A stretch of DNA of 64,000 nucleotides from Kudoa neothunni (Eukaryota > Animalia > Cnidaria), in NCBI GenBank assembly GCA_964304625.1, contig OZ199839.1, positions 965,980 through 1,029,979 of the forward strand, written 5' to 3'. The position numbers and the translations under genes were made by a program. Below, in pieces: positions 37,018 to 64,000 of this stretch; within the stretch, counting starts at the first letter, position 1; the number at the start of each line of letters is the position of its first letter. The notes below the pieces were generated by a model. The model was given only the letters and a program-made list of their open reading frames with translations, was not told the DNA's origin and searched no databases.

Positions 37018-38355
37018 TTACAGAATGGCCGTATCTAAATCTAAATTCGGCACGTCTTCAATCATGGCAAGTTCCGCATTCATTAATGCTTTCATATCAT
37101 TATTGAATCTTGTGTGATCATCCACATTGATTTCGTTTGGATTGGCGTAGTTTCTTGTTTGAATTATTGTTGTTGTCTTCTTCCATCTCATGCCTAATTT
37201 CTTCAAGTTTTGGCCTATCTCTTACGTGATAAGACCACCATTTAGTTTATTTGGAGTTTTTCAAACTGAAATTAACATTGGTTTCTCTGATTTCATTGTT
37301 ATTGTTAAAAAATTAATTCCCCGATGGTTAATTATATTGATATTAAAGTTGTTGGAATTTTGGTTTTTGTGGGTTCATTGTGTATTGTTATTAATTTGGT
37401 TTTTCACATATTATAGAGGTTGGTTAAACTGAATATTATGTTGATCATTATGTTGGATATTTTGCTGTTGTGCTAAGTGTAAGGGGAGCCAGCACAGTTG
37501 TGTCTTATATTGAGATATTTTGTTGATGGGTGTTTGATAATATAACACTTCTTTTGTATTGTTCATGAGCACCAAGAAAATTATCAATATGGTTAGAATT
37601 ATTCTCCAGAGTTAATTGTTTCATTGGTATATTGGGATTTGAATTTGGATTAGCATAGTTATGCATTAAAATAGGTGGGTTAATATTGTTATTCTCATTA
37701 CATCATTAGCAAAATAATTGTTATTATTTATATTGGTTAATTGATGTTGATGTATTATTGGCATATTATTTGGGTTAGAATCAGCGTTATTAGATGATAA
37801 TTGCGTGATGGGGATATCTGAGCTAGTAATTCTTTTATTATTATTGTTAATGTCAATATCAACTGTTAGATATGGCAGTTAAATTATCATTGCAATGCAC
37901 TGCATCGTTCGCGTTGTTGTAATCATAGTTTACATGGAATAGTTGTGGATTAGGATTATTGGATTAACATCCGGAGAAAACAAAATTGGTCAGTTCAAGT
38001 CATTTGAGGAAATTGAGTTGTTGGCCGATTCGTTAGATTGTGAATTTAATGGATCATTCAACGAGATCACAATGTCATCACATTCATAAGTTGGAGATTG
38101 GTAAGAGTCGGGTGCTGACTCATCGACGTCGTTAGTGGATGCCAGCTCATCGTTCGATTTTGAGGAGACAATATTGTTGATAACGTTATCAGCACTTAAC
38201 GATAGATTCGTCAACCACAGCATCAACAGTGGAGGAAATATTGGGATTTTTGGTAGGATTGAGTAATAATTATTTATGGTAGTATTCACTGTTGTATTCT
38301 GACGGAGAAATTGAAATTGCCAAAGTTAGAGGAATAATCAGATTATGGGGGATTA
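37018..38355 (-). mobile_element. Relic D: internal fragment of a B-like retrotransposon N-terminal region
   Basis: LIIPLTLAISISPSEYNSEYY, NDVDESAPDSYQSP.YECDD, FLGAHEQYKRSV and LDLDTAIL; paralogous to 38800-40190. Confidence 0.75.
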
Positions 38356-40791
38356 GCTGGTTGTTGGGAAGATTGAGAATTATTAGAGTGGATTTTAGTT
38401 TCACCGCTACTTTGGATGACAATGGGGTGATTTCTTGTTGTTGACATTAATTTGTTAATTTCCTGAGATAAAGATTGCGATTTAGATATTGGGTTGGGAG
38501 TTAATTTAAATTTAGATTCAGATTTAAGCGACTCTTCGACCTCAATAATCGAATTGTCCTCTAGCGCTGAATAGTAGAAAGTGTCTTCATAGTTGAGGTG
38601 AGTCCTAGGCGCGAAATATTGAGGAACATTAGGAGATGGGTCGTAGTAGATGACAAGCGAAGAATCTGGTGATAATGAGTTGTCTGGTGAGCTTTGGACT
38701 TGCTCTATTAATTCACTCTTGATGTGAATAGAACTGTCACTATCGTTAAGTGTTGGAAGTGGGGAAGTAACTTTAGTGATTATCACGTCATCATCATCAT
38801 CTTCATGATTAGGTGGATCTTCAAGAATTGCCAAATCTAGGATATGAGCTGGATTGGGATTGTATTCGATCATAGCAAGATCTGTGTCCATTAAAGCTTC
38901 AATGTCAGCTCTAAATCTTGCATGGTCGCCTTCTAGATTGTTTTTGATGGGGGCTAAATTAGAGGGTGCCAACATAATGTCCATTATGTCGATTTCTTCT
39001 GGATTGCCCACCTGATGATAATTACAATAATTATGGTTGTTAGAGTGTCCCTCTATTTCATCAATTATCCTTTCCAATTCTAGCCGATCTCTCTCGAAAT
39101 CTGCCCACCATCTAGCATCTCTATAATTTTCCGCGCGGATTTTTGCATTATTATTGGAATTAATAACATTACGTTGAGCAAAATGTTGTTTATTAATATT
39201 ATAAGTTGTTTGGTTGGAGTTGGAGGTAGGATTGGATTGTTGTTTAAGGTCATTATCGTTGTTGGCATTGGCATGGGTGTGTGTGGACAGAACATTTTTC
39301 TTGTACTGCACTAATGCATCCATAAAGCCAAGATCACTGTTGTTGTTTTGGGTGGTTGGCATAATATTTGGCATAATATTTAGTTCAGTTGACTTATATT
39401 TGGCTTAGTGACTTCCTCCGGGGAATTATGATTAGTGTTAGTGATAATGTTAGGGTTAGTATTAGAAATAACTATTGGACTAACATAATTGTGCATAGGA
39501 ACCAACGATTTTGTTATAATTATCATTATCCACATAAACATCATTATTATGATTAGAATTATTAGAATTATCATTAGAAATATCAATAGTGGTTATTGGA
39601 GGTAAATTTGAACTGATATTATTGGATATTGATTGCGTGCGTGAGTTGAAGATTATCATAATTATCAGTAATTTCATCATTATCAATGATTGCAGTATTA
39701 AGTGGATCATTTGATATTGGATTACAACGCATTGAAATATTGCAATCATAATTTACTTGTAATTGAAGTGTGGATTAGGATTATCAGTATTAGTATTAGT
39801 ACTAATATCATCTGAAGAATTCAAAGTTGGTGGGTTCGAGTCAAATTGATTGGCCGATTCATCAGATTGTAAATTGAGAGGGTCATTCAGGGAGATGACA
39901 ACATCATCACATTGATAAATTGGCGATTGGAAAGAGTCGGGTGCTGACTCATCAACGTCGTTAATGGATGCCAGCTCATTATTCGACTTTATTAAAGTGG
40001 CATTGGCGATAATGTTATCAGCACTGATAACAGATTCATCAACCACAGAGTCAACAGTATAGAGGAAACATTGGGATTTTGAAAGGGGTAAAGTGGCAAC
40101 ATTTTACGGTAATACTCACTGTTGTATTCCGACGGTTGGGTGGAAATGGCTTTGGTAATTGGAATAATAAGACTATCCGGGATTAACCCAGATATTATAA
40201 AATTTTCATTTTTAGCGTCCAATTCTTCAATTAGAGCACTTTTGAGTTGGTTGACAGCAAGCTTGTATCGTTCTTTACGTTCCAGTATGGCTTTTGGGAT
40301 TTTTCGTGATGACCGGTTTAAGACCATCCAGATTAACTTTAAAGATGCCTTTATTTTTAGCTGTTCCTCTACAGCTACAGACTCATCAATTTTATATGGT
40401 ATAGCCAGTGTTGGGGGCGTTGTATAAAAGTAATTGTCAATGATATCAAATAGCTCTTTAGGGAGATCCTCCCTAGATAAGATACCAGAAAAGATCTTCA
40501 GAGATCCATGGAACAACGAAATATACTTCCTAACAAAGTCAGCAATACATTTATCAACAACAGATAGTTTAGCACCACTAAGGCGCTTCTCCAAATATGA
40601 TGAGTAAAGGTGGTAAATTATCGGGGAAATTTCGTGCTCAAAATATTGTAACAAATCAGTCACACAAACTTCGCAATTGCACCGTTAGAATTGTTAGGTC
40701 ATACACACCGCAACATGCATAAATTTTCCATTTCCGCTCCGAAAAAACGAAAAATTTCGCCTGGTAGGGGGCTCGAACCCATGGCCTCAAG
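38356..40791 (-). mobile_element. Relic C: 5' 2.4 kb of a B-like retrotransposon, RT/RLE half deleted
   Basis: Starts with the junction block and the B-type leader GGAGCGGAAATGGAAAATTTATGCAT. ORF pieces HEISPIIYHLYSSYLE, ASLKLIWMVLNR, WWADFERDRLELE and PIVIQSSGETKI match B1. Confidence 0.85.
40758..40791 (-). pseudogene. tRNA 3' half (positions ~40-73, tRNA-Lys-like), junction 1
   Basis: CTTG-AGGCC-ATGGG-TTCGAGC-CCCCT-ACCAGGC-G reads as 3' anticodon stem, 5-nt variable loop, T-arm with B-box, acceptor 3' strand and G discriminator, followed by T5/T6 runs. The anticodon is absent, so the isotype is inferred. Confidence 0.8.
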
Positions 40792-40927
40792 TACACAAAA
40801 ATAGCGGGAAAAATAGTGTTTGTAAACTAATCTAATAAATGTTTATTTTGGGAAGGTGGAAGTTGGAATTGGGATGGTCCTTGATTGGTTGGATGATCTA
40901 AATAAAAATTAACAATTATTAAACAAG

Positions 40928-43900
40928 TTACGTGCGGTTTGGTGGAGAAGATTTCGTTTTCGCCACTCCCTGTAAGGGGGGTTGCGAAGACGGAATCTTG
41001 GGAGGTATCTTCATCGGCTTTTTGGATGGTTGGGATAGTGGTTTTTGGATGGATTTCTTAATGGATTTTTTGCGCGATGAAGGTGGAGGTGGAGGCGCCA
41101 AAGTCATCACTGGGGTAGCTTTGATAACCATGGGTGGCGTCACAGATTTCTTCTTCTGGGGAGGTGGATTTTTAAAGATATCATCAGTTTGGGATAGAAA
41201 CACTTGGGATGATTGGGAGTTTTGAGGAGAGTTGGAGGTGGGAATTTCAATTGTTGGGATGACTTGTTGGATAGTCTTGATGATATTGGTGGATTTGGTT
41301 GCTGGAGTGCGTTTTTTAGGCGCGTTTCGCAGCAGTGGTTTTTGGTTGTCCACATAGACACCATTTCTACAAATGGGTGTAGCGGAGGTTCCAAAGACAT
41401 GGGCTCTCCAGATGGTCGAAGAGTCCAAGAGAACAGATCTGGTGATTGCTTTCTTTAAGGCTGACACCCTCTTTTTGTTTTTAACAAAAAGAGCTTTATA
41501 TACATCATTATTGGGCTCATAATGAGCCCCCAAAGAACCGTAGATCAGCGCATAAAGTTGGCACGAGTAGCCCTTTTCCATCCATTGTGATTGCTCCTCC
41601 CTGTACTTGGCAACCTTGTGTTGGTGTACTTCTTCCAGGCGAGAGAGTGACGATTCGAAGGTGATGGAAACGTCGCAGATAATGACATCTTTGGTTTGGT
41701 CATTGAGGAGTACAATATCTGGTCGACGGTTAGAGGGGATCTGTGGGAAAATGGTGTCGAGGAATGTCACCCAATTCTTATTGGGCTTCATCTGTTCAGC
41801 GATGAGGTCAACAATATGGTTGTGTCGAGCGGACCTTGCTCTTTCACCGAACTTGCAGCCACCCAGAATATGTCCTAGGTGTTCCGTTGCCACATGGCAA
41901 CGTCTACAGTCGGATTCAGAACAAAGTTTACGTATTTTCAATACGCACTTTGTGGGGAGCGCATTCACTCGCGCCAGGATGCCAAAGCGGTAGACATAGG
42001 GAGATACATCACCTTGGTTAATCCAGGAGTTTGCGACTTTGCTTCCCACAAAACACTCAACGGATCGTCCCTGCATACGCTGAGACTTCCATACGTCGAG
42101 GAACATCGACTGAACATGCCACCGAATACGGCGTACTCGGGTGGCACCTCGCTGTTGATGAGGGGGAATGTGTGGTGGCGGACTGAGGTAATCAGAGTCA
42201 ATGTCAATCTTTGAGGGAGACTGTTCATCGGCTTGCTTGACTTGGAGTCCAAGAGACTTTGCATTCAAGCGGATGCTAGAGAAGATACTTCTCACGTCTC
42301 TGGACTTGATATACTCAGTGTCCCTGTTAAAATAGTCCTCAGGGGTGAGACTTTCGTTGGTTCTCTTACCAACGATGGATAAAATTGCGTCCTCAGACAG
42401 TTTGGCGACTCTTTCATCCGCGGAATGGATGAGGTTGAGTGCGGAGGCTAATCGGAGGGCACAAAAGTCGAGTTTAAGGCATCTCAGACCGAATCCCCCC
42501 ACTGCACATGGAGTGTACAGTAGGGACTTTGTAACAGATTCGGGCATAGCTAACCAATGGCGAACTGATGACCGAATCTCAGAATCGATTTTCTTGAGGT
42601 CCTCGATGCGGATAATGTTATTCTTCATAGAATACTCAAGGGTGGGCATTAAGTAAGTTTTCGTGAGGTTAATCTTCATAAAGTGCAGTAGGGGAGCGTT
42701 TGAAACTTTTTGAAGGTTCTCACTAAACTTAGGGAAGCAAGGTGGCAGGTCTTTAAACGACTTTAGATTTTTACAGGTACCTAGGTACTTATAAAAATCC
42801 TCCATCAGCGGGATTGGCACACCTTGGAGAACATATGGTTGGATTAATGTGGAATTTACAATGCGTGTTTTATTCTTAAATGTGACATTAAGTGTCGCAC
42901 TCTTGGAATGGTTAATGCGCAGACCAAGATCATTAATAAATGCTTCGAATTGATGGAGGAGGACATTCATTTGGATATTATTCTCGGTCAGCAACACAAT
43001 GTCATCGGCATATGCCAACGCACCAAAAACCTGACCGTGAAGTTTATATCCCTGTTTTGAGTCATCAATTCGTCGCAAAAAGGGGTCCAAAACGAGGTTA
43101 AAAAGTAGGGGGGATAAGGGGCATCCCTGTCGTACACCTTTACCATAAGGATAAAGGTAGCCAGTTCCGCCGCTCTTATCCGTAACCTCGTTGAAGCTGT
43201 TTGCGTACATATGTTTTAAGAGGTTGGTGATTTGATGGGGGATATTAAAGTGGTTAAGTTGCTTTAATATCTCGGAATGGGGGACGGTATCGAAGGCCTT
43301 TTTCAGGTCTATCCAGACAGCTGATAGAGGGTTCTTCTCACGTCGTACGTCATCTAAAATTTCCTGGAGAATGAATGCGTGTTCAACGCATCCATTTCCA
43401 CCGACGAATCCTTTTTGAGACGGGCTTAGTTCAACTAGGGAGGCGAGCTTTTTATTGACCACACTCATAAACAATCTGTAGATTGTTTGCGTAATAGAGA
43501 TTGGTCTATACGCTGAGGGGTCCAACACATTAATTTCGCCGTCGGTCTTTGGCAGGAGTATGAGACGGCTAACAAGCCAATCATCAGGGACTCGCTCAGA
43601 ATTAAGGATCCTGTTGAACAACTTTGCTAGATGAGAATCCATAGAGGGCACCTTTTTCCAAAAGGCCATATGTATTCCATCCTTACCAGGGGCAGTATCT
43701 TTCTTTGCGCGGTCCAGAGCAGCACTGACTTCTTCATCAGCAATATAAAAATCGCTGAATCGGTTACCAGACTGATAGAGGGCTTCTGTGGTATACGGCA
43801 CCGGTTCTACTTCATTAAGTGATACTTGAGAAGAGATTTTAACTTTCTCAGGGGGCTTAATAAAAGTAGGTTCTTCATCATCTAGCTTAGAGGCTGGAGA

Positions 43901-46573
43901 GGCTAAAGGGCTAAAGTTGGGAAATTTAAACTTAGGGGTAGGTGGAGACAACGGTTCACGGAATATGAGGTCTTCAGGCGCAACCTTTTCAGGCTCACCA
44001 TCATTAGATTCATTTTCAACATGATCCGAAGGAAGAGAAGACATTTGACTGTTATCCAAAGCTGGAATCTTAATAGGGGAAAGTTCGTCAGCATTCGTAC
44101 CACAGAGAATTGTCTTAACGTCGTTGGAGTTGATGAAGGAGAGAGAATCAACTATTTCTTCAGCAGATGCTTCGCACCACTTTGGCCTAGCCTCAGTTAT
44201 TTCACGAAAACATCGCTTTTGGTTACAGCGATATAAAACACGCAGACGTTTTGCTTCATTTTTAGGGGCTTTTTCAACTGGAGAATCATCTTTAATGGTG
44301 ACTTGAGTGGTTGATTCTTCAGGTGCATCTTGAGTCGGTGTAGGGGAAGCAAGAATATTCTTTAAAGCTTCATCGACAAAGGTTTTCGCGGGCTCCGGAG
44401 CTTTCGGATGGTAAACCATCTTCAGTTCTTTTGCACCGTTATGCGCCGTTGTGATGAAGTGAGTATATAAATCATTAATGGGTAATTCAGAGTGAGTGGA
44501 CATAACAGACCTGAGCTCATTAGAGACGCGCTCCAATGTTTCAGCTTGTTTCTTACGAAACTCAGCTGCCCTTTTACGAATTTTGTCATGTTTCTCACGA
44601 GCCGCTATTTCATTCATTACTTCCTCCGGAATTGAAGAGGTTTCATGTGCTTTTTCATTGGCGGCATCACGTTTGGCTTGTAAATAAGATGGGGGTGGTG
44701 GAACAAAGATAGAGCGCAGTTCGGAATCTGCGATATCTTTTTCCAGAGCGGAAAGATCTAGAGGTTTGTCTAGATTTGGGTTGAGTGGGATTGTATCAAC
44801 ATTTTCATGAGATTTAAAGGATTTTTGTCGACAATCACGCAAATAATTATCAACAAAGGCAAGAGAGTGTTGGCGTTTACTTGGTTTTAATTTGGATTGA
44901 GCAAAGATAGAATCATTAGGCGTAAAAATAACTTCCTCAACATTAGGCTCAAACTCGGACATAATTAATGGTGTAGCGCAAACTTTCTCCTCATTAAGTG
45001 CTTCCACATCAATATCGGAATTGTTAATAATAATAGATTCATCAATATTGACGAGTTGCATAGAATTAAGAGCTTTTTCATTAGAATTACCATCAATTAA
45101 CTCATTATGGTGCTCAATGTTAGATTTGGTTAAATTACTCGATTTAACACGCTCATTCAACTTCTTACTAATTATAGTAGGTATAAATTTGCCAAACTTA
45201 TTCTTAGTAAGCGCGGATTTTGATTTTTTGGGTTTAACGTTAACTGGTTTAGCTTTAAACTCATTTGGAGCATCTGCGTCATTAAACACGATATCGCTAT
45301 CGTCCTCACTTAAAACTTTAGAATTCTGACCAATAAATTCCATGTTTTCATTTTTAATGGCGTTTGCTGCGTTAAGTGGTTGAAAAGGTGTAAATTTAGC
45401 ACTATCATTATTCAATGAATCATGCGCAGGCAACACCGAAGTGTCGTCGTCGTCGTTTACACTTAAAATTGATTCATTATCACCAGATTCAACGTCGTTT
45501 AATTCAGTATAACCTTCCATACCTTCATAAACAACGTTAAATGCTGGGTTTCCTACAGTTAACTTGCTCATAAACATTGCGTGAGCATCTGGATCAACTA
45601 CCAAACCATTAATGTTCTGCAATGCTTTAAAGCTATCAAACGAAGAAAAAATTTTATTATTGGTGGAATTAACAACGCTAAAAGGTTGTTCTAACTCGCA
45701 ATTATCACTGTTGTACTCAATACTATCAACAGGTGGATTATTAAGGTTATTGTTACTCATTAATATGAGATTAGGTTGAAAATTGTTACGAGCTTTGCCA
45801 GAACGAGTAGAAGATGATTTTTTAATGTTGTCTGATTTAATATAACTGAGGAAAGAATCTAAATTGTCATGAGAGGCAAATTTAGATTCAAAGTCACGGC
45901 CGGAGATTAGGACCAGATTATCTGCGACAATAACATTCCCATCGTCATTATACAGGATTAAAGGTAGTGTGTTGTTATTTATCATGAAAAGAGCACTCTG
46001 ACGGATACTCTTTAACAAATTGTTAATTTCCGATTTTTTAGTGCCAGATGGCACCGCTTTCGGCTTATTAGAGCGCAATGAAACTTTTGATGCTGAGTCA
46101 CTATCGGCACGTTGCACGTGCAAATTAAAGTCGTTAGTTTTATAAGGAAAAGTGGAGTTGTTAGATGCATCAATACAATCATTAGATGTAACATTTGCAC
46201 TACTATCTATCGATAACGCAGTAATAGGCAAAGTACCTTGTTTGTAGGCCATAGAGAGGGTGGGATCTTCGGACAACTTTGATGATATATCTTCAGAAAA
46301 AGTTAACTCAACAAAGCGGGCTATACGTTGGAGAAAAGGAGACCCTTGGAGCTTCAAACGCCGACGTCGCAGAAACTCATCAAGGTAATATTGAATGAAA
46401 TCTGAGTAGCCTGTTAGGTCGACTTCAGCTAAACTGAGGTCAAACCCAACAAAAATGGCATCGTTAGATTCCTTATAACCTAACCAACCATCTAGTGCTA
46501 AAATTTCGCGTTTTCGAGCTGAAAAAAAGGTCGAAAAACGAAAAATTTCGCCTGGTAGGGGGCTCGAACCCAT
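40928..46573 (-). CDS. 1881-aa reverse transcriptase / CCHC / restriction-like endonuclease protein
   Basis: APGKDGI, YRPISI, QKGF, WIDLKKAFDTV, GVRQGCPLSPLLFN, YADD, YKYLG, GGFGL, CRRC..TEHLGHILGGC, RHN, RPDIV..DV...K..KY. Pre-RT KRLRVLYRCNQKRCFREI resembles the Utopia/NeSL motif. Confidence 0.95.
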   Translation of the reverse strand: MGSSPLPGEIFRFSTFFSARKREILALDGWLGYKESNDAIFVGFDLSLAEVDLTGYSDFIQYYLDEFLRRRRLKLQGSPFLQRIARFVELTFSEDISSKLSEDPTLSMAYKQGTLPITALSIDSSANVTSNDCIDASNNSTFPYKTNDFNLHVQRADSDSASKVSLRSNKPKAVPSGTKKSEINNLLKSIRQSALFMINNNTLPLILYNDDGNVIVADNLVLISGRDFESKFASHDNLDSFLSYIKSDNIKKSSSTRSGKARNNFQPNLILMSNNNLNNPPVDSIEYNSDNCELEQPFSVVNSTNNKIFSSFDSFKALQNINGLVVDPDAHAMFMSKLTVGNPAFNVVYEGMEGYTELNDVESGDNESILSVNDDDDTSVLPAHDSLNNDSAKFTPFQPLNAANAIKNENMEFIGQNSKVLSEDDSDIVFNDADAPNEFKAKPVNVKPKKSKSALTKNKFGKFIPTIISKKLNERVKSSNLTKSNIEHHNELIDGNSNEKALNSMQLVNIDESIIINNSDIDVEALNEEKVCATPLIMSEFEPNVEEVIFTPNDSIFAQSKLKPSKRQHSLAFVDNYLRDCRQKSFKSHENVDTIPLNPNLDKPLDLSALEKDIADSELRSIFVPPPPSYLQAKRDAANEKAHETSSIPEEVMNEIAAREKHDKIRKRAAEFRKKQAETLERVSNELRSVMSTHSELPINDLYTHFITTAHNGAKELKMVYHPKAPEPAKTFVDEALKNILASPTPTQDAPEESTTQVTIKDDSPVEKAPKNEAKRLRVLYRCNQKRCFREITEARPKWCEASAEEIVDSLSFINSNDVKTILCGTNADELSPIKIPALDNSQMSSLPSDHVENESNDGEPEKVAPEDLIFREPLSPPTPKFKFPNFSPLASPASKLDDEEPTFIKPPEKVKISSQVSLNEVEPVPYTTEALYQSGNRFSDFYIADEEVSAALDRAKKDTAPGKDGIHMAFWKKVPSMDSHLAKLFNRILNSERVPDDWLVSRLILLPKTDGEINVLDPSAYRPISITQTIYRLFMSVVNKKLASLVELSPSQKGFVGGNGCVEHAFILQEILDDVRREKNPLSAVWIDLKKAFDTVPHSEILKQLNHFNIPHQITNLLKHMYANSFNEVTDKSGGTGYLYPYGKGVRQGCPLSPLLFNLVLDPFLRRIDDSKQGYKLHGQVFGALAYADDIVLLTENNIQMNVLLHQFEAFINDLGLRINHSKSATLNVTFKNKTRIVNSTLIQPYVLQGVPIPLMEDFYKYLGTCKNLKSFKDLPPCFPKFSENLQKVSNAPLLHFMKINLTKTYLMPTLEYSMKNNIIRIEDLKKIDSEIRSSVRHWLAMPESVTKSLLYTPCAVGGFGLRCLKLDFCALRLASALNLIHSADERVAKLSEDAILSIVGKRTNESLTPEDYFNRDTEYIKSRDVRSIFSSIRLNAKSLGLQVKQADEQSPSKIDIDSDYLSPPPHIPPHQQRGATRVRRIRWHVQSMFLDVWKSQRMQGRSVECFVGSKVANSWINQGDVSPYVYRFGILARVNALPTKCVLKIRKLCSESDCRRCHVATEHLGHILGGCKFGERARSARHNHIVDLIAEQMKPNKNWVTFLDTIFPQIPSNRRPDIVLLNDQTKDVIICDVSITFESSLSRLEEVHQHKVAKYREEQSQWMEKGYSCQLYALIYGSLGAHYEPNNDVYKALFVKNKKRVSALKKAITRSVLLDSSTIWRAHVFGTSATPICRNGVYVDNQKPLLRNAPKKRTPATKSTNIIKTIQQVIPTIEIPTSNSPQNSQSSQVFLSQTDDIFKNPPPQKKKSVTPPMVIKATPVMTLAPPPPPSSRKKSIKKSIQKPLSQPSKKPMKIPPKIPSSQPPLQGVAKTKSSPPNRT

Positions 46574-46582
46574 GGCCTCAAG
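46549..46582 (-). pseudogene. tRNA 3' half, junction 2
   Basis: Identical 34-mer to 40758-40791; overlaps the first codons of the A1 ORF. Confidence 0.8.
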
Positions 46583-46718
46583 TACACAAAAATAGCGGGA
46601 AAAATAGTGTTTGTAAACTAATCTAATAAATGTTTATTTTGGGAAGGTGGAAGTTGGAATTGGGATGGTCCTTGATTGGTTGGATGATCTAAATAAAAAT
46701 TAACAATTATTAAACAAG

Positions 46719-49700
46719 TTACGTGCGGTTTGGTGGAGAAGATTTCGTTTTCGCCACTCCCTGTAAGGGGGGTTGCGAAGACGGAATCTTGGGAGGTATC
46801 TTCATCGGCTTTTTGGATGGTTGGGATAGTGGTTTTTGGATGGATTTCTTAATGGATTTTTTGCGCGATGAAGGTGGAGGTGGAGGCGCCAAAGTCATCA
46901 CTGGGGTAGCTTTGATAACCATGGGTGGCGTCACAGATTTCTTCTTCTGGGGAGGTGGATTTTTAAAGATATCATCAGTTTGGGATAGAAACACTTGGGA
47001 TGATTGGGAGTTTTGAGGAGAGTTGGAGGTGGGAATTTCAATTGTTGGGATGACTTGTTGGATAGTCTTGATGATATTGGTGGATTTGGTTGCTGGAGTG
47101 CGTTTTTTAGGCGCGTTTCGCAGCAGTGGTTTTTGGTTGTCCACATAGACACCATTTCTACAAATGGGTGTAGCGGAGGTTCCAAAGACATGGGCTCTCC
47201 AGATGGTCGAAGAGTCCAAGAGAACAGATCTGGTGATTGCTTTCTTTAAGGCTGACACCCTCTTTTTGTTTTTAACAAAAAGAGCTTTATATACATCATT
47301 ATTGGGCTCATAATGAGCCCCCAAAGAACCGTAGATCAGCGCATAAAGTTGGCACGAGTAGCCCTTTTCCATCCATTGTGATTGCTCCTCCCTGTACTTG
47401 GCAACCTTGTGTTGGTGTACTTCTTCCAGGCGAGAGAGTGACGATTCGAAGGTGATGGAAACGTCGCAGATAATGACATCTTTGGTTTGGTCATTGAGGA
47501 GTACAATATCTGGTCGACGGTTAGAGGGGATCTGTGGGAAAATGGTGTCGAGGAATGTCACCCAATTCTTATTGGGCTTCATCTGTTCAGCGATGAGGTC
47601 AACAATATGGTTGTGTCGAGCGGACCTTGCTCTTTCACCGAACTTGCAGCCACCCAGAATATGTCCTAGGTGTTCCGTTGCCACATGGCAACGTCTACAG
47701 TCGGATTCAGAACAAAGTTTACGTATTTTCAATACGCACTTTGTGGGGAGCGCATTCACTCGCGCCAGGATGCCAAAGCGGTAGACATAGGGAGATACAT
47801 CACCTTGGTTAATCCAGGAGTTTGCGACTTTGCTTCCCACAAAACACTCAACGGATCGTCCCTGCATACGCTGAGACTTCCATACGTCGAGGAACATCGA
47901 CTGAACATGCCACCGAATACGGCGTACTCGGGTGGCACCTCGCTGTTGATGAGGGGGAATGTGTGGTGGCGGACTGAGGTAATCAGAGTCAATGTCAATC
48001 TTTGAGGGAGACTGTTCATCGGCTTGCTTGACTTGGAGTCCAAGAGACTTTGCATTCAAGCGGATGCTAGAGAAGATACTTCTCACGTCTCTGGACTTGA
48101 TATACTCAGTGTCCCTGTTAAAATAGTCCTCAGGGGTGAGACTTTCGTTGGTTCTCTTACCAACGATGGATAAAATTGCGTCCTCAGACAGTTTGGCGAC
48201 TCTTTCATCCGCGGAATGGATGAGGTTGAGTGCGGAGGCTAATCGGAGGGCACAAAAGTCGAGTTTAAGGCATCTCAGACCGAATCCCCCCACTGCACAT
48301 GGAGTGTACAGTAGGGACTTTGTAACAGATTCGGGCATAGCTAACCAATGGCGAACTGATGACCGAATCTCAGAATCGATTTTCTTGAGGTCCTCGATGC
48401 GGATAATGTTATTCTTCATAGAATACTCAAGGGTGGGCATTAAGTAAGTTTTCGTGAGGTTAATCTTCATAAAGTGCAGTAGGGGAGCGTTTGAAACTTT
48501 TTGAAGGTTCTCACTAAACTTAGGGAAGCAAGGTGGCAGGTCTTTAAACGACTTTAGATTTTTACAGGTACCTAGGTACTTATAAAAATCCTCCATCAGC
48601 GGGATTGGCACACCTTGGAGAACATATGGTTGGATTAATGTGGAATTTACAATGCGCGTTTTATTCTTAAATGTGACATTAAGTGTCGCACTCTTGGAAT
48701 GGTTAATGCGCAGACCAAGATCATTAATAAATGCTTCGAATTGATGGAGGAGGACATTCATTTGGATATTATTCTCGGTCAGCAACACAATGTCATCGGC
48801 ATATGCCAACGCACCAAAAACCTGACCGTGAAGTTTATATCCCTGTTTTGAGTCATCAATTCGTCGCAAAAAGGGGTCCAAAACGAGGTTAAAAAGTAGG
48901 GGGGATAAGGGGCATCCCTGTCGTACACCTTTACCATAAGGATAAAGGTAGCCAGTTCCGCCGCTCTTATCCGTAACCTCGTTGAAGCTGTTTGCGTACA
49001 TATGTTTTAAGAGGTTGGTGATTTGATGGGGGATATTAAAGTGGTTAAGTTGCTTTAATATCTCGGAATGGGGGACGGTATCGAAGGCCTTTTTCAGGTC
49101 TATCCAGACAGCTGATAGAGGGTTCTTCTCACGTCGTACGTCATCTAAAATTTCCTGGAGAATGAATGCGTGTTCAACGCATCCATTTCCACCGACGAAT
49201 CCTTTTTGAGACGGGCTTAGTTCAACTAGGGAGGCGAGCTTTTTATTGACCACACTCATAAACAATCTGTAGATTGTTTGCGTAATAGAGATTGGTCTAT
49301 ACGCTGAGGGGTCCAACACATTAATTTCGCCGTCGGTCTTTGGCAGGAGTATGAGACGGCTAACAAGCCAATCATCAGGGACTCGCTCAGAATTAAGGAT
49401 CCTGTTGAACAACATTGCTAGATGAGAATCCATAGAGGGCACCTTTTTCCAAAAGGCCATATGTATTCCATCCTTACCAGGGGCAGTATCTTTCTTTGCG
49501 CGGTCCAGAGCAGCACTGACTTCTTCATCAGCAATATAAAAAATCGCTGAATCGGTTACCAGACTGATAGAGGGCTTCTGTGGTATACGGCACCGGTTCT
49601 ACTTCATTAAGTGATACTTGAGAAGAGATTTTAACTTTCTCAGGGGGCTTAATAAAAGTAGGTTCTTCATCATCTAGCTTAGAGGCTGGAGAGGCTAAAG

Positions 49701-52365: not shown

Positions 52366-52374
52366 GGCCTCAAG
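52341..52374 (-). pseudogene. tRNA 3' half, junction 3 (B1/A2 boundary)
   Basis: Identical 34-mer. Confidence 0.8.
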
Positions 52375-52580
52375 AACAATACAATATAGATCCGTAGATC
52401 AGTAAAATAAGTGTTATAGAATTAAACTAAATAAGTTTGAAGCGAATCGGATGGAAATTGATGGAGATATGGACGATTTGGTGATTTTTGGGTTTTCGGA
52501 AAACTTCGGTCACTTACGAGTATAGTCGTTGAAAAGGGGACATTGAGTTAGGATGGTGTGGAAATTTTGGTGGAGATTGG

Positions 52581-55500: not shown

Positions 55501-58500
55501 AACATCTGAAGGTTGATTATTGAAGGAATTAATGGTTGCTATCAACTCTTCGGACGCATTTCTGAATAATTGGGTACGCTTTTCTTTGCGTCTCTTATTT
55601 CTCACAGCTGGGTCCTCATCAGGCTCTTCTTGGTGTTGTGAAAAAGGTATTGGCTCTGATAAAGGTTGTGAGGGTATTTGATTGCTTTGTAATTGGCTAG
55701 ATGGATTTATTTTAGGGGTTACTTTAGGGTTAAATGGATTGTTGGTAATTGTAGATAATTTCTTAGGAATTTTTAATTTTTGTTTAGATTTAGGTGCTGG
55801 AGTGATACCAACATTCGAAGTAACATTGGAAACAATTGTTGTGCCTATAGATTGGATTTTGTTGTGATTTTTATTGATTCTATTAGCTAAAGCTTGAAGA
55901 TGCGGATCAGGACTATTAACCTGTGGAAAATGCTTTTTTGAAGGCGCAGGTTGTTGTGAAGATTTGTCAGATTCTTCAATAAATTGAAGATTGGCTTGGA
56001 TTTTTGTATTGCCACTACTTTGGATGACAATTGGTTTGTTTATAGAGGGAACTTGTTTAGTAGTGATAGTTAGTGGTTTATTAGCATTTTTATCTCGCAA
56101 TTTTCTGGCATTTGCTTTGTTTTTAGCAATAGTAATTAGTTGATTGACTTCTTGAGAAATCGTAGTAATTTTCGGTTGAATTAATTTTGGAGATTCCTCT
56201 TCTATTATTACAGAATTATCCTCTACAGTGGAGAAGTAAAGGGTATCTTCTTGATTAATTGGAGTAGGAATTGTAGTTGGTGTTGGAGCTTTAGGAGCGT
56301 TATATGTTGGGATATTGGTTGGTGGATCATAGTACACAATAAATGATGAATTGGATGAAATTGATGAATTTAGAATGTTTGGTTCCTTTTCAATTAGTTC
56401 TAATTTGACAGCAGAACAGTCGCCTTCAATTGATGAGTTGGGTGATTTATTTGGTGATTTAACACTTACAATAATAACATCTTCATCATCTTCAATGGAA
56501 TTTTCCAAAATGGCAACGTCTAGATTGTTTTCCTGTGATGACTGATTCATCGTTGAATCGTTCAATAAACTGTAATTATTGCTTAATTCTACTGTATTTT
56601 CATCAGCCATAATTGCCATTAATTCATTTCTATATTGCTCATGTTGATTATCAAATGTTAGAGTTTTTTGCGACCTGTTTGATATTGTCTTATTAGGCGC
56701 TAACATTATGTCTATAATATTTATTTCCTCTGGGTTGGGAACTAATATTTGCTTAAAATTATTATTTTGATTCTCAATTTCATTTTCCCTAACTATCTGT
56801 TCTAGTTTTAGTCGATTTCTTTCAAATTCAGCCCACCATTTAGCTTCCTTAGCATTTTTTAAGCGATAACTGACATTATCGCTATTGCTATTGTTAGCTG
56901 AGTTATTGTTATTATTCATAAAGTTGATTGTCTTGTCAGTGTTTATATTAATGTTAATATTAATATTATTGTTATTATAGTGGTGGTGGTGATTTTGGAC
57001 ATTATGTTGTGTGGTTAAATTGCATGTTGTTTCATTTCTATTAGATACAGATTTGGGATTGAGAATTGGATTATGGATTGGATTGGATTTGGTGCACGTA
57101 GATATAACATTCTTTTTATATAATTCTAGTGCACCAAGGAAACCGTAATTATTATCAATATTATCAATATTATTATTATTATTAATATTAATATTATTAT
57201 TATTATCATTATTATTATTATTATCATTATTATAATAATAATTTTGGTTAATATCATTCTCCGATGGTTGTAGTGTAACTTTAGCTGCGTCGTCATTATT
57301 CGTGTTTACATTGTTGACATTTGTTGTTGATATTGATGCTGATGTTAATGTTGTTGACGTTGTTGTTGATGTGGAATTAATCAAATTAATCAAATTTTGT
57401 TGAGTTGCAGATGAGTTTAAGGTTGCGGTCGTGTTAACATTGACGTTATTGATATGATCAACAGTTTTATTGGTGTTATTATTATCAATGAAATGATTGT
57501 TGTTTAATAGTGATGGAACAGACTTTTCTTCGTGTAATTGTTGTTCCTGCTGTTGATTAGTAATAGAAAAGGAATTAGTAGGAATGGTGTGAAAGAATGG
57601 TTGAGTCACGCAAGGATTAGCGTGTTGATCATTAATAATATCATTATCAATAACGTTCAATGTAGGAATAGAATTGTTGTTATTTTCCGCGTTAATTTTA
57701 ACATCGCAATGCGTTGCAGCTATATTAAAAGTTACTTGTTGTTGACCGGTTGCGTCAACCGAGTCAGTTGATGGATTAGATGGATTAGCATGGTAAAGTG
57801 ATGATTTTGGAGAATGTGAAATTGATGAGTTCGAGTCATTGGAATGGGTAGATTCTGTTGGATATAAATTCAGTGGATCATTTAGCGAAATGATGAGGTT
57901 TTCGCAGTCGAGCAATGGAGAGTCGTTTACCGATTCTTCTTCGTCTATTTCTTCGTAGGCGTCGCATGGTAATTCGTTATCAGCGTAATGGTCGGTGGTG
58001 AATCGATAATTATCATCCGCTAGCTCATTTACAGTAATCTTGTTGGTTTCATTAGTGAGTAAATTAGTGGTGCTTTCTAGTGATGTAGTGTGTGGGTGAT
58101 TTGGAACAATTGTCGATTGGAATATTGTTATATAAATGAGAATCATATTCCGATGGTTGGATGGATATTGCCAAGGTTAGTTGGATAACCAGATTATCGG
58201 GGATTAATCCGATTTCCATAAAAATTTTCATTTTTCTCGTTTAGTTGATCAATGATGGCGTTTTTTAAGAGCATCAATAGAAAGCGAGTAACGTTGCTTT
58301 CGCTCTAGTACTCGTTTTGGGAGTTTTGGATTGCAACGATTTATTACCATCCAAACCAACTTTAAAGATGGCCTGATTTTGACATCTTCTGATGGTTCAA
58401 TCGTGTCAATATTGGGACATGGACAAGCCAAGGTAGGTATGTTTCTATCGTAATACTCATCAATTGCGTGTTGAGCGTTTTCCGAGTGTTTAATTGAGGA

Positions 58501-58809
58501 CAACATTTCCGTAAAGATTGGCATAGAGCATTGAAACAATGAAATGTACTTTCGTACAAAGTCAGCCACACTTTTAGCTATAGGCGGTAGTTTTGCGCAC
58601 GTACCTTTCAATTCTAGATATGAAGAATATAGATGAAAAATCATCGGTGAAAGTTCGTGGTCAAAATTCCTCAGCATCGAGACCTCGCAAACTGATTTTA
58701 AAGGTATCTTCATAATCAGCGCATCGTAATTTTGCGAAATATGCATAAATTTTCCATTTCCGCTCCGAAAAAACGAAAAATTTTCGCCTGGTAGGGGGCT
58801 CGAACCCAT
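52581..58809 (-). CDS. ~2050-2075-aa RT/RLE protein of B1, interrupted by four +1 homopolymer indels
   Basis: YRPISI, WLDLTKAFDTV, GVRQGCPLSPLLFN, FADD, YKYLG, CRHC..GVETLGHVLGGC, RHN, RPDIV..EV..K.EKY. Indels near 58263, 58222, 58095 and 55397 are inferred from comparison with relic E and copy B2. Confidence 0.85.
57140..57245. repeat. (ATT)n-rich low-complexity tract encoding poly-Asn in family B (also ~63590-63695)
   Basis: Imperfect ATT repeats translate as YYYNNDNNNNNDNNNNININNNNNIDN. Confidence 0.85.
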
Positions 58810-58818
58810 GGCCTCAAG
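58785..58818 (-). pseudogene. tRNA 3' half, junction 4
   Basis: Identical 34-mer followed by AAAATTTTTCGTTTTTT. Confidence 0.8.
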
Positions 58819-61800
58819 AACAATACAATATAGATCCGTAGATCAGTAAAATAAGTGTTATAGAATTAAACTAAATTAAGTTTGAAGCGAATCGGATGGA
58901 AATTGATGGAGATATGGACGATTTGGTGATTTTTGGGTTTTCGGAAAACTTCGGTCACTTACGAGTATAGTCGTTGAAAAGGGGACATTGAGTTAGGATG
59001 GTGTGGAAATTTTGGTGGAGATTGGTCAATGGTGGACAACAGAATCCTGCACATGATTATTCCAGATGAGCCTGGAATCGTTCAGAACAGAATTCGTGAT
59101 GTCCTTCAGTAAGCGACGACAACATTTCTTACCTTTTAGCAAGCAGAACTTGGTGAGAGTTTCCATGGTCGTCGGGTGATGAGATCCGAGAGCTCCAAAG
59201 ACCAGAGCACGGCGAAGAACTCCCCAGCGTTTCTCTTCAAGTCTTCGTCCCTCAACGGCATATTTCTCGCCTTTGTGGTATAGGACTTGATTGAGTCTCT
59301 CTACAGAGCTTTCGTAACTGATAGTTACTTCCACAATGTAGATCGACAAAATCTTGTAGTTGACCAGCACAATATCGGGACGACGAGAGGAAACACCATC
59401 TGGAAGAGGGCGATCTTTGTAGAGTTCCCAATATTGCTTGGCCTGATTTTTTTTTGGAGTCGAGTTGACGTTGAATTTGTTCGGTGATGAGTTGGACGAC
59501 ATGGTTATGTCGAAGCGTACGTAACGCCTCTCCATGTTTACATCCACCTAACACATGCCCGAGAGTTTCTACTCCGCAAGGACAGTGTCGGCAGATAACG
59601 TCCGGGGACATCTTCATATTGAAGAGGATTGGTTTTGTGGCGAGTACGGTTCAAACGTCCCCATAATTGCAAACCGGTAGGTGTTAGTCTTCATGTTGCA
59701 CTTTCTCAACCAATTGTTGCAAAGAGGATCATTGCTAAAACATGATACTAGCTTACCTTGTGAAGGTTGCTCAGACCAATGTTCTAGGTGGAGTTGTTGA
59801 ATGTGTCTTCTCAGGCGACGAATGCGAGATGGTGTGACGATGGATGGTCGACGATTAGCAGCAGCATTTTGCGGTTTCTTAAGGCTATCATCGTCCAAGT
59901 CAAGAATATTTTGAGGTGTAGATTGAGAAGAAGTATTGGTAAAGAGGGAAAGTTGGATATTCAGAGCCTTACGGTTTAATCGGATGGAGGACAGTAAGGA
60001 ACGAATGTCGCGAACTTTGCCAATTTCTTTATCCATATGGACATATTCAAGGACTGATTTGGTTGAATTGGTTCTATTTTTAACAATCATCTCGAGAGAA
60101 TGATTTGCTACATTTGAAATTTTAGTATCATCTGCATTTAGCATGTTAAGAGCAACGGCTAGTCGTAGGGCGTGGTAATCTTCTTTCAAATTTCTAAGTC
60201 CAAGACCACCAAGCGCCAGTGGGGTGTAGAAAAAGTGTGATGATGTTGTGTGAGGGATACTAAGCCATTTACGAACAGTATAAATGATATGGCGATCTAG
60301 TTTCTTCAATTCCTCAACTCTTAGGCAATGATTGCGAAGAAAGAACTCCAAGGTAGGTAACAGATAGATTTTAAAAGAGTTCTGTCTTCATAAATGGTAG
60401 CAATGGAGAATCTGCCAACTTTTGCAAGTTGGTTTCAAACTCCTGGAATTCGGGCGGCAAAGTTTTGAATGAGCTTAAATTCATTGATGTGCCGAGGTAT
60501 TTGTATAGTTTTTCTTCCGTAAGAGTTGGAATTAATTCATTGTTGATTTTTAGAGGGAAAGCTTGATTGTTAGGAAGTGATTGGTCATTAACTTTTTTGA
60601 TTTTCTTCACATAATTCAAGACAAGTTGGCTAGATTTGGAACAATTAAATGACATGTGAATATTATTGAAATATTCTTGACAATCCGATAAAAGTTTTTG
60701 CATGTTTGCTTGGGAATCTGCCACAAGCACCAAATCATCCGCAAAAGCTTGGATAGAAAATTTAGTGTCGTGGAGAATGTAACCATGAGGTGAGTTGTCG
60801 ATTAGTTTTAGCAGATTGTCAATTGCCATGTTAAACAAGAGTGGAGAAAGTGGACAACCCTGACGAACACCTTGTTGATTCATTGGAATCTTGCAAGAGT
60901 TGCCAGTGTAATCATAAGCAATATTGTAACTTTCAGCATATAGATTTTTAATAAATGTTTGTAGGGTGGTTGAAAAATCAAATTGTGACATCACGGAATC
61001 AAGTACATAGTGGGGGACGGTGTCAAACGCTTTAGTAAGGTCTAGCCACACAACACATAAATCTTTTTTGTCCCTTCGAGCAGAATCCATAATTTCCTGC
61101 AAAGTAAACATGTGTTCACAACAGCCATTGCTTGCAATGAAGCCTTTTTGAGCAGGTGAGAGTTGTACCATTGGACGAATCTTGGAATTAACACAAGACA
61201 TGAACAAACGATAAATAGTTTGTGTAATGGAAATAGGACGGTACTCGGATGCGTCAAGTTGATTTGGATTCTCTGATTTAGGTATTAAGACGAGTCTACT
61301 CTCCAACCATTCAGTTGGAGGTGACGCCGAATTGATGATTTTGTTGAATACTGTCCTCAAGATAAAATCTGATTTTGGTAAGTATTTCCAAAAGCGAACT
61401 GGAATTCCATCAGTGCCATTACTGGTATCAACTTTGGCTCTATCAAGAGCCGCCCTGATTTCTTCTTCAGTGAAATAAAGAATGTTCTCACATGTGTCCC
61501 TTTTGGAGTAAGGATTTTCTTCATTTTTATTGTTTTGATCAATTTTCTTTAAATTTTAAAGGTTTAGTTACAAAATCATCCGAAATTGGAGTTGAGATTT
61601 GGAATTTGATGGAATAACTTGAGAAGGTGGAGGAGATTTAGTCAATTGTTGTTGGAGTTGCTCAGCAGTAGCTTTGCACCAGATTGGCTTGTTCTGAACA
61701 ATCTCGCGGTAACAGCGTTTGCGATTGGTCCTATACATACCTCTCAATCGTTTTATCTCATCTTTAGATAATGTTGGAGATGTCTCAGTTGTTGGATTAT

Positions 61801-64000
61801 TATTAGGAAAAGTTGGTGCATTGCTAGAGTTAACAGTTGTTGATTTTTCTTTATTATGTTGATTTTGATTTTGTTTAGGAATCGGAACATAATACATTCC
61901 CAAATTATTTGCATGAATTTTTGCTTTCGCAATAAATTCTGCATATAAAACATCTGAAGGTTGATTATTGAAGGAATTAATGGTTGCTATCAACTCTTCG
62001 GACGCATTTCTGAATAATTGGGTACGCTTTTCTTTGCGTCTCTTATTTCTCACAGCTGGGTCCTCATCAGGCTCTTCTTGGTGTTGTGAAAAAGGTATTG
62101 GCTCTGATAAAGGTTGTGAGGGTATTTGATTGCTTTGTAATTGGCTAGATGGATTTATTTTAGGGGTTACTTTAGGGTTAAATGGATTGTTGGTAATTGT
62201 AGATAATTCTAATAGGAATTTTTAATTTTTGTTTAGATTTAGGTGCTGGAGTGATACCAACATTCGAAGTAACATTGGAAACAATTGTTGTGCCTATAGA
62301 TTGGATTTTGTTGTGATTTTTATTGATTCTATTAGCTAAAGCTTGAAGATGCGGATCAGGACTATTAACCTGTGGAAAATGCTTTTTTGAAGGCGCAGGT
62401 TGTTGTGAAGATTTGTCAGATTCTTCAATAAATTGAAGATTGGCTTGGATTTTTGTATTGCCACTACTTTGGATGACAATTGGTTTGTTTATAGAGGGAA
62501 CTTGTTTAGTAGTGATAGTTAGTGGTTTATTAGCATTTTTATCTCGCAATTTTCTGGCATTTGCTTTGTTTTTTAGCAATAGTAATTAGTTGATTGACTT
62601 CTTGAGAAATCGTAGTAATTTTCGGTTGAATTAATTTTGGAGATTCCTCTTCTATTATTACAGAATTATCCTCTACAGTGGAGAAGTAAAGGGTATCTTC
62701 TTGATTAATTGGAGTAGGAATTGTAGTTGGTGTTGGAGCTTTAGGAGCGTTATATGTTGGGATATTGGTTGGTGGATCATAGTACACAATAAATGATGAA
62801 TTGGATGAAATTGATGAATTTAGAATGTTTGGTTCCTTTTCAATTAGTTCTAATTTGACAGCAGAACAGTCGCCTTCAATTGATGAGTTGGGTGATTTAT
62901 TTGGTGATTTAACACTTACAATAATAACATCTTCATCATCTTCAATGGAATTTTCCAAAATGGCAACGTCTAGATTGTTTTCCTGTGATGACTGATTCAT
63001 CGTTGAATCGTTCAATAAACTGTAATTATTGCTTAATTCTACTGTATTTTCATCAGCCATAATTGCCATTAATTCATTTCTATATTGCTCATGTTGATTA
63101 TCAAATGTTAGAGTTTTTTGCGACCTGTTTGATATTGTCTTATTAGGCGCTAACATTATGTCTATAATATTTATTTCCTCTGGGTTGGGAACTAATATTT
63201 GCTTAAAATTATTATTTTGATTCTCAATTTCATTTTCCCTAACTATCTGTTCTAGTTTTAGTCGATTTCTTTCAAATTCAGCCCACCATTTAGCTTCCTT
63301 AGCATTTTTTTAAGCGATAACTGACATTATCGCTATTGCTATTGTTAGCTGAGTTATTGTTATTATTCATAAAGTTGATTGTCTTGTCAGTGTTTATATT
63401 AATGTTAATATTAATATTATTGTTATTATAGTGGTGGTGGTGATTTTGGACATTATGTTGTGTGGTTAAATTGCATGTTGTTTCATTTCTATTAGATACA
63501 GATTTGGGATTGAGAATTGGATTATGGATTGGATTGGATTTGGTGCACGTAGATATAACATTCTTTTTATATAATTCTAGTGCACCAAGGAAACCGTAAT
63601 TATTATCAATATTATCAATATTATTATTATTATTAATATTAATATTATTATTATTATCATTATTATTATTATTATCATTATTATAATAATAATTTTGGTT
63701 AATATCATTCTCCGATGGTTGTAGTGTAACTTTAGCTGCGTCGTCATTATTCGTGTTTACATTGTTGACATTTGTTGTTGATATTGATGCTGATGTTAAT
63801 GTTGTTGACGTTGTTGTTGATGTGGAATTAATCAAATTAATCAAATTTTGTTGAGTTGCAGATGAGTTTAAGGTTGCGGTCGTGTTAACATTGACGTTAT
63901 TGATATGATCAACAGTTTTATTGGTGTTATTATTATCAATGAAATGATTGTTGTTTAATAGTGATGGAACAGACTTTTCTTCGTGTAATTGTTGTTCCTG
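58819..64000 (-). mobile_element. Family B copy B2 (5' end lies beyond the window)
   Basis: Matches B1 apart from short indels, mostly in homopolymers, that fragment the ORF. Confidence 0.92.

What the first reader, a model, noticed from the sequence alone, without database searches (positions are those of the whole stretch)
40743..64000. tRNA-targeting RLE retrotransposon array whose junctions would regenerate the target tRNA
Seen: four RT/RLE elements lie head to tail. Each junction (40743-40791, 46534-46582, 52326-52374, 58769-58818) is the same ~49-bp block, CTTGAGGCCATGGGTTCGAGCCCCCTACCAGGCG-AAATTTTTCGTTTTT on the minus strand. It reads as tRNA positions ~40-73 plus Pol III terminator runs, in the same orientation as the elements. 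Element 3' ends abut it at the same base. Known: R2-group elements are often site-specific (R2 in 28S rDNA, NeSL and CRE/SLACS in spliced-leader genes, Utopia in U2 snRNA), and some make long target duplications. Inference: these elements cut in the anticodon arm of one tRNA gene. The block is either a long TSD or carried by the element, and it rebuilds a complete, terminated tRNA upstream of each insert, much as phage attP repairs a tRNA. The site then stays functional and reusable. I do not recognise a described NeSL/Utopia-like family with this target.
Basis: partly seen in the sequence, partly recalled or inferred. Interest (0 to 1): 0.92.

Follow-up and report, generated by a model that had tools for sequence, protein, structure and literature searches.

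The report
Retrotransposon array rebuilding its tRNA target
Two unrelated families of R2-like jumping genes are stacked head to tail inside a tRNA-Lys(UUU) gene that has no close copy elsewhere in this genome. Each copy is followed by a spare 3' part of the tRNA, so one complete gene survives at the head of the stack, and relatives do the same at about 17 other tRNA genes.

Summary
The 34-nt tRNA piece (positions 40-73) plus a 15-17-nt T-rich trailer occurs four times in the window. It occurs six times in the genome, all in this one array. No second close copy of that gene was found.

The elements have a reverse transcriptase followed by a zinc knuckle and a restriction-like endonuclease (RLE), and they align to solved R2 proteins. 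Two families share the site. A is 5.74 kb (E1, E2, E5) and B is about 6.4 kb (E3, E4). They are not sisters (AU p 1.5e-7).

Related lineages sit behind at least 17 other tRNA genes, always joined at tRNA position 37-40. The nearest outgroup lies between U2 genes, like Utopia.

This is a new variant of a known kind. NeSL-related tRNA-Pro, tRNA-Arg and tRNA-Glu elements were reported in 2015. In the one OCR-read 5' junction of planarian LIN15_SM, the upstream tRNA-Arg copy stops short of its 3' end. Here the gene is rebuilt, and the two targets I searched have no close copy elsewhere.

Whether the repeated piece is a ~50-bp target duplication or is copied from the element's RNA leader stays open. 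I lean to the leader.

First readers of this scan noted the same pattern in other windows of this genome.

The parts
40743..40791 (-). Junction block 1: tRNA-Lys positions 40-73 plus the T-rich trailer. Downstream of it lies a decayed family-B-like 5' end.
40792..46533 (-). E1, family A, 5742 nt. One open frame of 1881 codons (40928-46573) that runs up into block 2.
42887..43552 (-). Reverse transcriptase domain of E1 (residues 1008-1229)
   Evidence: Pfam RVT_1, E 6.6e-37; aligns to R2 proteins 9nl3, 9dou and 8gh6
41486..42097 (-). Zinc knuckle plus restriction-like endonuclease region of E1 (about residues 1493-1696)
   Evidence: Second aligned stretch to the R2 protein 9nl3, E 6.9e-18; motifs read
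46534..46582 (-). Junction block 2. It contains the T-stem ATG at 46573-46571, the first in-frame ATG of E1's long frame.
46583..52325 (-). E2, family A, 99.8% identical to E1. The frame is split near codon 942 as assembled.
52326..52374 (-). Junction block 3, between a family B 3' end and a family A 5' end
52375..58768 (-). E3, family B, about 6.39 kb. Open frames of 921 and 974 codons (the second holds RT) overlap at 55381-55505.
58769..58818 (-). Junction block 4. Its trailer is one A and one T longer than before family A elements.
58819..64000 (-). 3' 5.2 kb of E4, family B. The rest lies beyond a 200-N assembly gap.
32656..40742 (-). Decayed tail of the array: rearranged 5' fragments of B-like elements, with a 29-nt remnant of the tRNA 3' end plus trailer at 35468-35496

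Best explanation
Shown: this is an array of site-specific non-LTR retrotransposons of the R2/NeSL/Utopia group. They carry a reverse transcriptase, then a zinc knuckle and a restriction-like endonuclease, and no AP endonuclease. The array sits in one tRNA-Lys(UUU) gene. Each element's 3' end is joined to tRNA position 39/40. Each element is preceded by tRNA 40-73 plus a two-T-run trailer. One complete, terminated gene stands at the head.

Inferred, about 0.9: the element protein nicks the antisense strand of the tRNA gene at the 3' edge of the anticodon loop and primes reverse transcription there. The integration leaves a whole gene upstream and a 3'-part relic downstream. The rebuilt head gene is hit again, so the array grows at the head and older units decay at the tail. 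Some unequal crossing-over is added on top.

Committed sub-mechanism, about 0.55: the inherited unit is [tRNA 3' part + trailer + element]. The template RNA starts in or upstream of the block. The cDNA copy of this leader anneals to the target and rebuilds the gene's 3' part and terminator. Drosophila R1 transcripts that carry upstream 28S sequence are proposed to work in this way.
For: Architecture.

Protein: RVT_1. The RT and the zinc-knuckle/RLE stretches align to solved R2 proteins at E 9e-61 and 7e-18.

Generality: the same layout is seen at Gln, Trp, Asn, Phe, Thr, Ser and Met genes, with the junction always at index 37-40. By coordinates, 16 of the 38 scored tRNAs lie 1.6-5 kb upstream of an RT hit on the same strand.

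Re-use of the site:
- A and B are not sisters (AU p 1.5e-7) yet share the site.
- The unit order is A A B B A.
- The Gln array mixes at least four lineages with dN/dS about 0.13-0.15.

Polarity: long open frames sit near the head and decay is at the tail in the Lys, Gln, Trp, Asn and Thr arrays.

Leader model:
- Gln units 1, 2 and 5 have identical coding sequence, but unit 2 is flanked by block types only 82% alike. The types are non-contiguous along the array and are found nowhere else in the genome.
- Type 2 goes with units 3 and 8, whose 3' halves are each other's closest match (83%).
- A metagenome relative has different trailers on its two sides.
- No 5'-truncated unit was seen.
- R1 precedent: PMC2718515.
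Against: - Families A and B, which are deeply diverged, share an identical block and trailer apart from homopolymer lengths. That looks target-derived.
- The extra A and T before family B elements are homopolymer differences, and this assembly is noisy in indels: E3 and E4 differ by 29 indels but only 4 substitutions.
- Gln unit 8 is a composite, so recombination clearly happens and could have shuffled the blocks.
- In the planarian relative LIN15_SM the flanks overlap by about 40 bp of tRNA-Arg, which fits a staggered cut (this is one OCR-read junction).
- No RNA data could be obtained.
- No ribozyme was found at the 5' ends.
- Nicking was not tested.
Confidence: 0.55

Rival explanations
1. 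Plain long target-site duplication. The endonuclease cuts the antisense strand at 39/40 and the sense strand about 15-17 bp past the tRNA end. Fill-in of this 49-51-bp stagger duplicates the tRNA 3' part and terminator. Element RNA starts only after the trailer.
For: - Two unrelated families share an identical block and trailer in the Lys array.
- The trailer goes with the tRNA locus, not with the element lineage: family B's sisters on Thr and Ser have other trailers.
- Planarian LIN15_SM shows about 40 bp of overlapping tRNA-Arg flanks.
- Long duplications are known in the group: the R9 paper's title says so, as cited in PMC5035012.
Against: - Identical Gln units are flanked by blocks only 82% alike.
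- The block types are non-contiguous along the array, which duplication alone cannot produce.
- The two trailers in L030 differ.
- There are no 5'-truncated units, although under this model truncation would be harmless.
Confidence: 0.3
2. No re-use of the site. Each family inserted once, and the arrays arose only by tandem duplication, unequal crossing-over and gene conversion of units.
For: - Neighbouring units are near-identical pairs. E1 and E2 differ by 11 positions; E3 and E4 differ by 4 substitutions.
- Gln unit 8 is a composite.
- Family A and B copies exist only in this array.
Against: - The order A A B B A cannot arise from B B A A by unequal exchange. A new copy must have reached the head, or B must have entered an internal block.
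- Several lineages under purifying selection are interleaved in the Gln array.
- The same layout is found at about 17 loci.
- Decay follows a head-to-tail gradient.
Confidence: 0.08
3. The elements insert just downstream of the tRNA gene, after the trailer, and carry the tRNA 3' part as their own 3' tail. The tRNA gene is never cut.
For: The resulting layout would be identical (inference).
Against: - Identical Gln units have different downstream blocks, so the block does not travel with the element upstream of it.
- Families A and B would both need to carry the same foreign tail.
Confidence: 0.05
4. Assembly artefact of a repeat.
For: A 200-N gap with about 1.5 kb of duplicated overlap lies inside E4, and indel noise is high.
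Against: - Eight sequenced loci show the same layout with different tRNAs and different elements.
- An independent metagenome contig shows it too.
Confidence: 0.02

Closest known systems
NeSL-related tRNA-gene-specific families: NeSL-1_TV (tRNA-Pro), planarian LIN15_SM (tRNA-Arg) and LIN25_SM (tRNA-Glu). Kojima and Jurka 2015, PMC4640811.
   Same: - They are RLE-type non-LTR elements inserted at a fixed site inside a tRNA gene, in the gene's orientation.
- The LIN15_SM 3' end printed in S6 Fig resembles the TTGTATAATTA-like ends seen here.
- Their flanking tRNA parts overlap.
   Different: - LIN15_SM joins at about position 26 on its 3' side and about position 66 on its 5' side. The upstream tRNA copy in that one OCR-read junction therefore stops short of its 3' end.
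- Here the overlap runs from 38-40 past the terminator, so a whole gene is rebuilt.
- Neither target checked here (Lys, Gln) has a close second copy.
- About 17 lineages, each on its own tRNA, coexist in one 40-Mb genome.
- No phylogeny against the named Repbase sequences could be run.
Utopia (U2 snRNA gene-specific RLE elements)
   Same: The nearest database outgroup, P0003 at 29% identity, lies between two U2 genes. P0013, from an oomycete, has RNase H plus RT, as described for oomycete Utopia.
   Different: The target is tRNA, not U2. The tRNA clade is separate, with 100/100 support.
R2 (28S rDNA)
   Same: The RT and the zinc-knuckle/RLE domains align to solved R2 proteins. Elements are site-specific and lack a poly(A) tail, and the ORF is open towards the 5' junction.
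   Different: - Pfam finds no N-terminal zinc finger or Myb domain.
- No HDV-like ribozyme hit was found.
- R2's target is multicopy and is inactivated by insertion.
Drosophila melanogaster-type R1, whose transcripts carry upstream 28S sequence, and R1 tandem arrays (PMC2718515)
   Same: Target sequence carried at the RNA 5' end is proposed to anneal and give precise 5' junctions, and tandem arrays occur.
   Different: R1 has an AP endonuclease and a 28S target, and does not restore the gene.
Dictyostelium TRE5-A and the Dada DNA transposons
   Same: Both are tied to tRNA genes.
   Different: TRE5-A lands near tRNA genes, not inside them. Dada is a DDE transposon with 6-7-bp duplications in multicopy tRNA genes.
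Phage and island integration into tRNA genes, where attP restores the 3' end (my own knowledge)
   Same: The mobile DNA brings or leaves a copy of the tRNA 3' part, so the gene stays whole.
   Different: That is tyrosine-recombinase chemistry in prokaryotes, not target-primed reverse transcription.

Membership tests
RLE-bearing non-LTR retrotransposons (R2/NeSL/Utopia/CRE group) | Reverse transcriptase of the non-LTR type | tested here: met
   Pfam RVT_1, E 6.6e-37. Best PDB matches are R2 proteins at E 1e-81, ahead of LINE-1 ORF2 at about 1e-25.
RLE-bearing non-LTR retrotransposons (R2/NeSL/Utopia/CRE group) | Zinc knuckle and PD-(D/E)xK restriction-like endonuclease C-terminal of RT; no AP endonuclease | tested here: met
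   The second aligned stretch to R2 (9nl3) covers the knuckle and nuclease motifs, E 6.9e-18. No Exo_endo_phos hit was found in five full-length proteins.
RLE-bearing non-LTR retrotransposons (R2/NeSL/Utopia/CRE group) | Fixed insertion site in a repeated or RNA gene, with precise 3' junctions | tested here: met
   All junctions fall at tRNA index 37-40 at eight loci.
R2 proper | N-terminal zinc finger and Myb DNA-binding domains; 28S target | tested here: not met
   No such Pfam domain was found in the roughly 900-residue N-terminal part of five lineages. The target is a tRNA gene.
NeSL clade (as used in Repbase) | RT groups with NeSL-1 and the LIN families in a phylogeny | not testable with these tools
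   No named NeSL or LIN sequences were on hand. The only indirect support is a Utopia-like nearest outgroup and a 3'-end motif like that of LIN15_SM.
NeSL clade (as used in Repbase) | Ulp1-like protease domain, present in some NeSL elements | tested here: not met
   No Peptidase_C48 hit.
Utopia | Insertion in U2 snRNA genes | tested here: not met
   No U2 is present in the arrays, whereas the outgroup P0003 is flanked by U2 genes.

The most novel reading that the evidence does not exclude
The tRNA piece that travels with each element both repairs and chooses the target. The protein has no recognisable DNA-binding domain and would recognise tRNA genes only generically. The co-transcribed tRNA 3' part would then direct and rebuild the particular gene by base pairing. 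That would explain why close relatives sit on different tRNAs while unrelated families share one. If so, this is a natural, RNA-programmable, gene-restoring integration system that can live on single-copy essential genes.
Probability: 0.15. Interest if true: 0.9.

Novelty: new variant of a known kind. Interest (0 to 1): 0.7.

Why it matters
Site-specific mobile elements are usually explained by multicopy targets: losing some copies does no harm (PMC3706591).

Here the two targets I checked (Lys, Gln) have no close second copy. About 40% of the tRNA genes that were scored are occupied, and the insertion geometry keeps a whole, terminated gene in place. That is a different way for an element to be harmless.

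It also gives a natural set of about 17 related RT/endonuclease proteins with different targets. Such a set is useful for working out how R2-like enzymes choose sites, and for designing insertions that do not destroy the landing gene.

Tried and rejected
- ARAGORN finds no tRNA inside the window; the full gene lies beyond it.
- Rfam at a permissive threshold finds no ribozyme or other RNA family at the element 5' ends.
- RNAalifold on twelve 5' regions gives no consensus fold.
- The AlphaFold model of the N-terminal domain is confident for only three helices (mean pLDDT 59). I did not run a fold search on it.
- The pre-RT region has no PDB or Pfam match.
- Hand count of wobble pairs and mismatches: stems that span the junction have 9 of 84, and stems within one half have 7 of 63. 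There is no excess, so I dropped this argument for a foreign 3' half.
- 'The start codon lies inside the tRNA T-stem' is kept only as a possibility. In family A the ATG at the position conserved in sister lineages is out of frame in all three copies. The assembly is rich in indel differences, so this may be an artefact.

Steps I could not run:
I used no other route.
- A typed pattern to look for divergent tRNA-Lys(UUU) genes. 'No close copy' therefore means no copy within 3 mismatches of the 39-nt 5' part and no further BLAST match of the whole gene at E 0.001 or better.

Full report
**Observation**

Read on the minus strand, each copy is preceded by an element 3' end. Each is followed by a trailer of two T-runs and then by the next element's 5' end.

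The window is C2:965980-1029979 of a 40.3-Mb, four-contig genome, with about 29% GC outside the elements. The string occurs six times in that genome, all in this array.

The sixth copy is part of a complete 73-nt tRNA-Lys(TTT), at window-equivalent 72772-72844 (L009 2752-2824).

A 200-N gap begins at base 64001. The DNA on either side of it repeats about 1.55 kb of E4. So E4's apparent 8.1 kb is an assembly artefact, and the number of units is a minimum.

**Anatomy**

From the head the units run E5 (A), E4 (B), E3 (B), E2 (A), E1 (A), followed by decayed B-like 5' fragments down to about 32.7 kb.

- Family A is 5.74 kb with one frame of 1881 codons. As assembled, that frame is unbroken only in E1.
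- Family B is about 6.4 kb. Its frames are split in both copies.
- E3 and E4 differ by 4 substitutions but 29 indels, so many of the frameshifts may be assembly noise.
- E1 and E2 are sisters. E5 differs from them at about 0.5% of positions.

The family A protein has an RVT_1 domain. It aligns to solved R2 proteins in two stretches: RT at E 9e-61, and zinc knuckle plus restriction-like endonuclease at E 7e-18. Pfam finds no AP endonuclease, zinc finger, Myb or Ulp1 domain in five full-length proteins.

**Not a one-off**

A search with the family A RT-RLE region found 61 matches at about 19 loci. Exact A and B copies occur only in this array, and the other hits are 31-61% identical.

I fetched seven of those loci. 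Each is headed by a complete tRNA in the elements' orientation: Gln(TTG), Trp(CCA), Asn(GTT), Phe(GAA), Thr(TGT), Ser(AGA) and Met(CAT). Each element 3' end is joined to that tRNA from index 37-40 onward. This holds in tRNA-Ser too, despite its long variable arm, so the site tracks the anticodon arm and not the distance from the B box.

By coordinates, 16 of the 38 tRNA genes that the Rfam search scored lie 1.6-5 kb upstream of an RT hit on the same strand.

A metagenome contig (ENA ERZ795007) encodes a 48%-identical protein. It has a tRNA 3' part plus a T-run trailer at both ends of the element.

Many lineages end with a motif like TTGTATAATTA.

**Relationships**

All in-genome lineages plus the two metagenome proteins form one clade (100/100). 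Family A groups with the Phe and Trp lineages. Family B groups with Thr and Ser, at 60% identity.

A tree that forces A and B together is rejected (AU p 1.5e-7). The tRNA-Lys gene was therefore colonised twice.

The nearest outgroup, P0003 at 29% identity, lies between two U2 snRNA genes, which is the Utopia habit. P0013, from an oomycete, has RNase H plus RT, as described for oomycete Utopia.

Within the Gln array three lineages differ with dN/dS of 0.13-0.15, while units 1 and 5 are identical in coding sequence. These are elements under selection, not dead duplicates.

**Mechanism**

The shared 3' junction implies an antisense-strand nick at the 3' edge of the anticodon loop, followed by target-primed reverse transcription. 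This is an inference from the way R2-group elements work; nicking was not tested.

Because tRNA 38/40-73 plus the trailer stands on both sides of an insert, the upstream copy completes the gene. The head can then be hit again.

Head-first growth fits the decay gradient: the longest frames are near the head and wrecks are at the tail in five arrays. It also fits the order A A B B A, which unequal exchange alone cannot produce.

**Is the repeated piece a duplication or carried?**

For a 49-51-bp staggered cut:
- A and B share the same block and trailer.
- Family B's sisters on other tRNAs have other trailers.
- Planarian LIN15_SM has about 40 bp of overlapping tRNA-Arg flanks.

For a leader copied from the element's RNA:
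- In the Gln array, units with identical coding sequence are flanked by block types only 82% alike.
- Those types are non-contiguous along the array and exist nowhere else in the genome.
- Type 2 accompanies two related elements.
- The metagenome element has unlike trailers on its two sides.
- No unit is 5'-truncated.
- R1 offers a precedent for upstream target sequence carried in the transcript.

I put about 0.55 on the leader model and 0.30 on the plain duplication. Recombination blurs both, as the composite Gln unit 8 shows.

**Start codon**

In family A the only in-frame ATG upstream of the conserved N-terminal domain lies in the tRNA T-stem, at the tRNA's only stem mismatch. If real, the mRNA must include the block. 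Given the indel noise, I treat this as unproven.

**Novelty**

tRNA-specific NeSL-related families are already on record (PMC4640811). In the one 5' junction of LIN15_SM readable in the OCR text of S6 Fig, the upstream tRNA-Arg copy stops at about position 66, so it lacks its 3' end.

Four further literature searches found no description of a gene-rebuilding geometry, of polar arrays on tRNA genes, or of such a radiation.

Neither head gene I searched has a close second copy in this genome.

No sequencing reads could be used.

Noticed in passing
window 64001 onward (L007 1-200): A 200-N assembly gap lies inside element E4, with about 1.55 kb duplicated on either side. Similar 200-N gaps sit inside the Gln, Trp and Phe arrays, so unit counts are minima.
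   Followed up: partly
about 60-90 nt after the tRNA end in each lineage, e.g. window 46470-46480 (minus strand): A conserved 11-nt motif with core CTAACGA lies 0-25 nt upstream of the start codon in 9 of 12 lineages. It has no consensus fold and its role is unknown.
   Followed up: partly
L010 8541-8576; L030 about 118-155 and 5155-5190: Gln-lineage 5' leaders contain a short intron-like stretch just before the start ATG: a GTAAGT donor, a CTAAC branch-like site and a TTTTTAG acceptor. This is unusual for a retrotransposon. It could be an outron for trans-splicing.
   Followed up: no
L031 9474-9663 and 14909-15090: The 29%-identical outgroup element (P0003, from another organism's assembly) lies between two near-complete U2 snRNA genes, like Utopia.
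   Followed up: partly
window 23774-24808 (minus strand): An open frame with a MULE transposase domain (E 8e-10).
   Followed up: no
window 1936-4323 and 10455-11821: Two copies, about 90% identical, of a 2.4-kb repeat spaced 7.5-8.5 kb apart. Not identified.
   Followed up: no
L014/L015, Gln unit 8 (C2:7605289-7613492): An 8.2-kb composite of two old lineages fused without a tRNA block between them. This is evidence of recombination inside the arrays.
   Followed up: partly
L025, second Thr block (about C1:15571016-15571050): The relic tRNA-Thr 3' part carries a 4-nt internal duplication in its acceptor strand.
   Followed up: no
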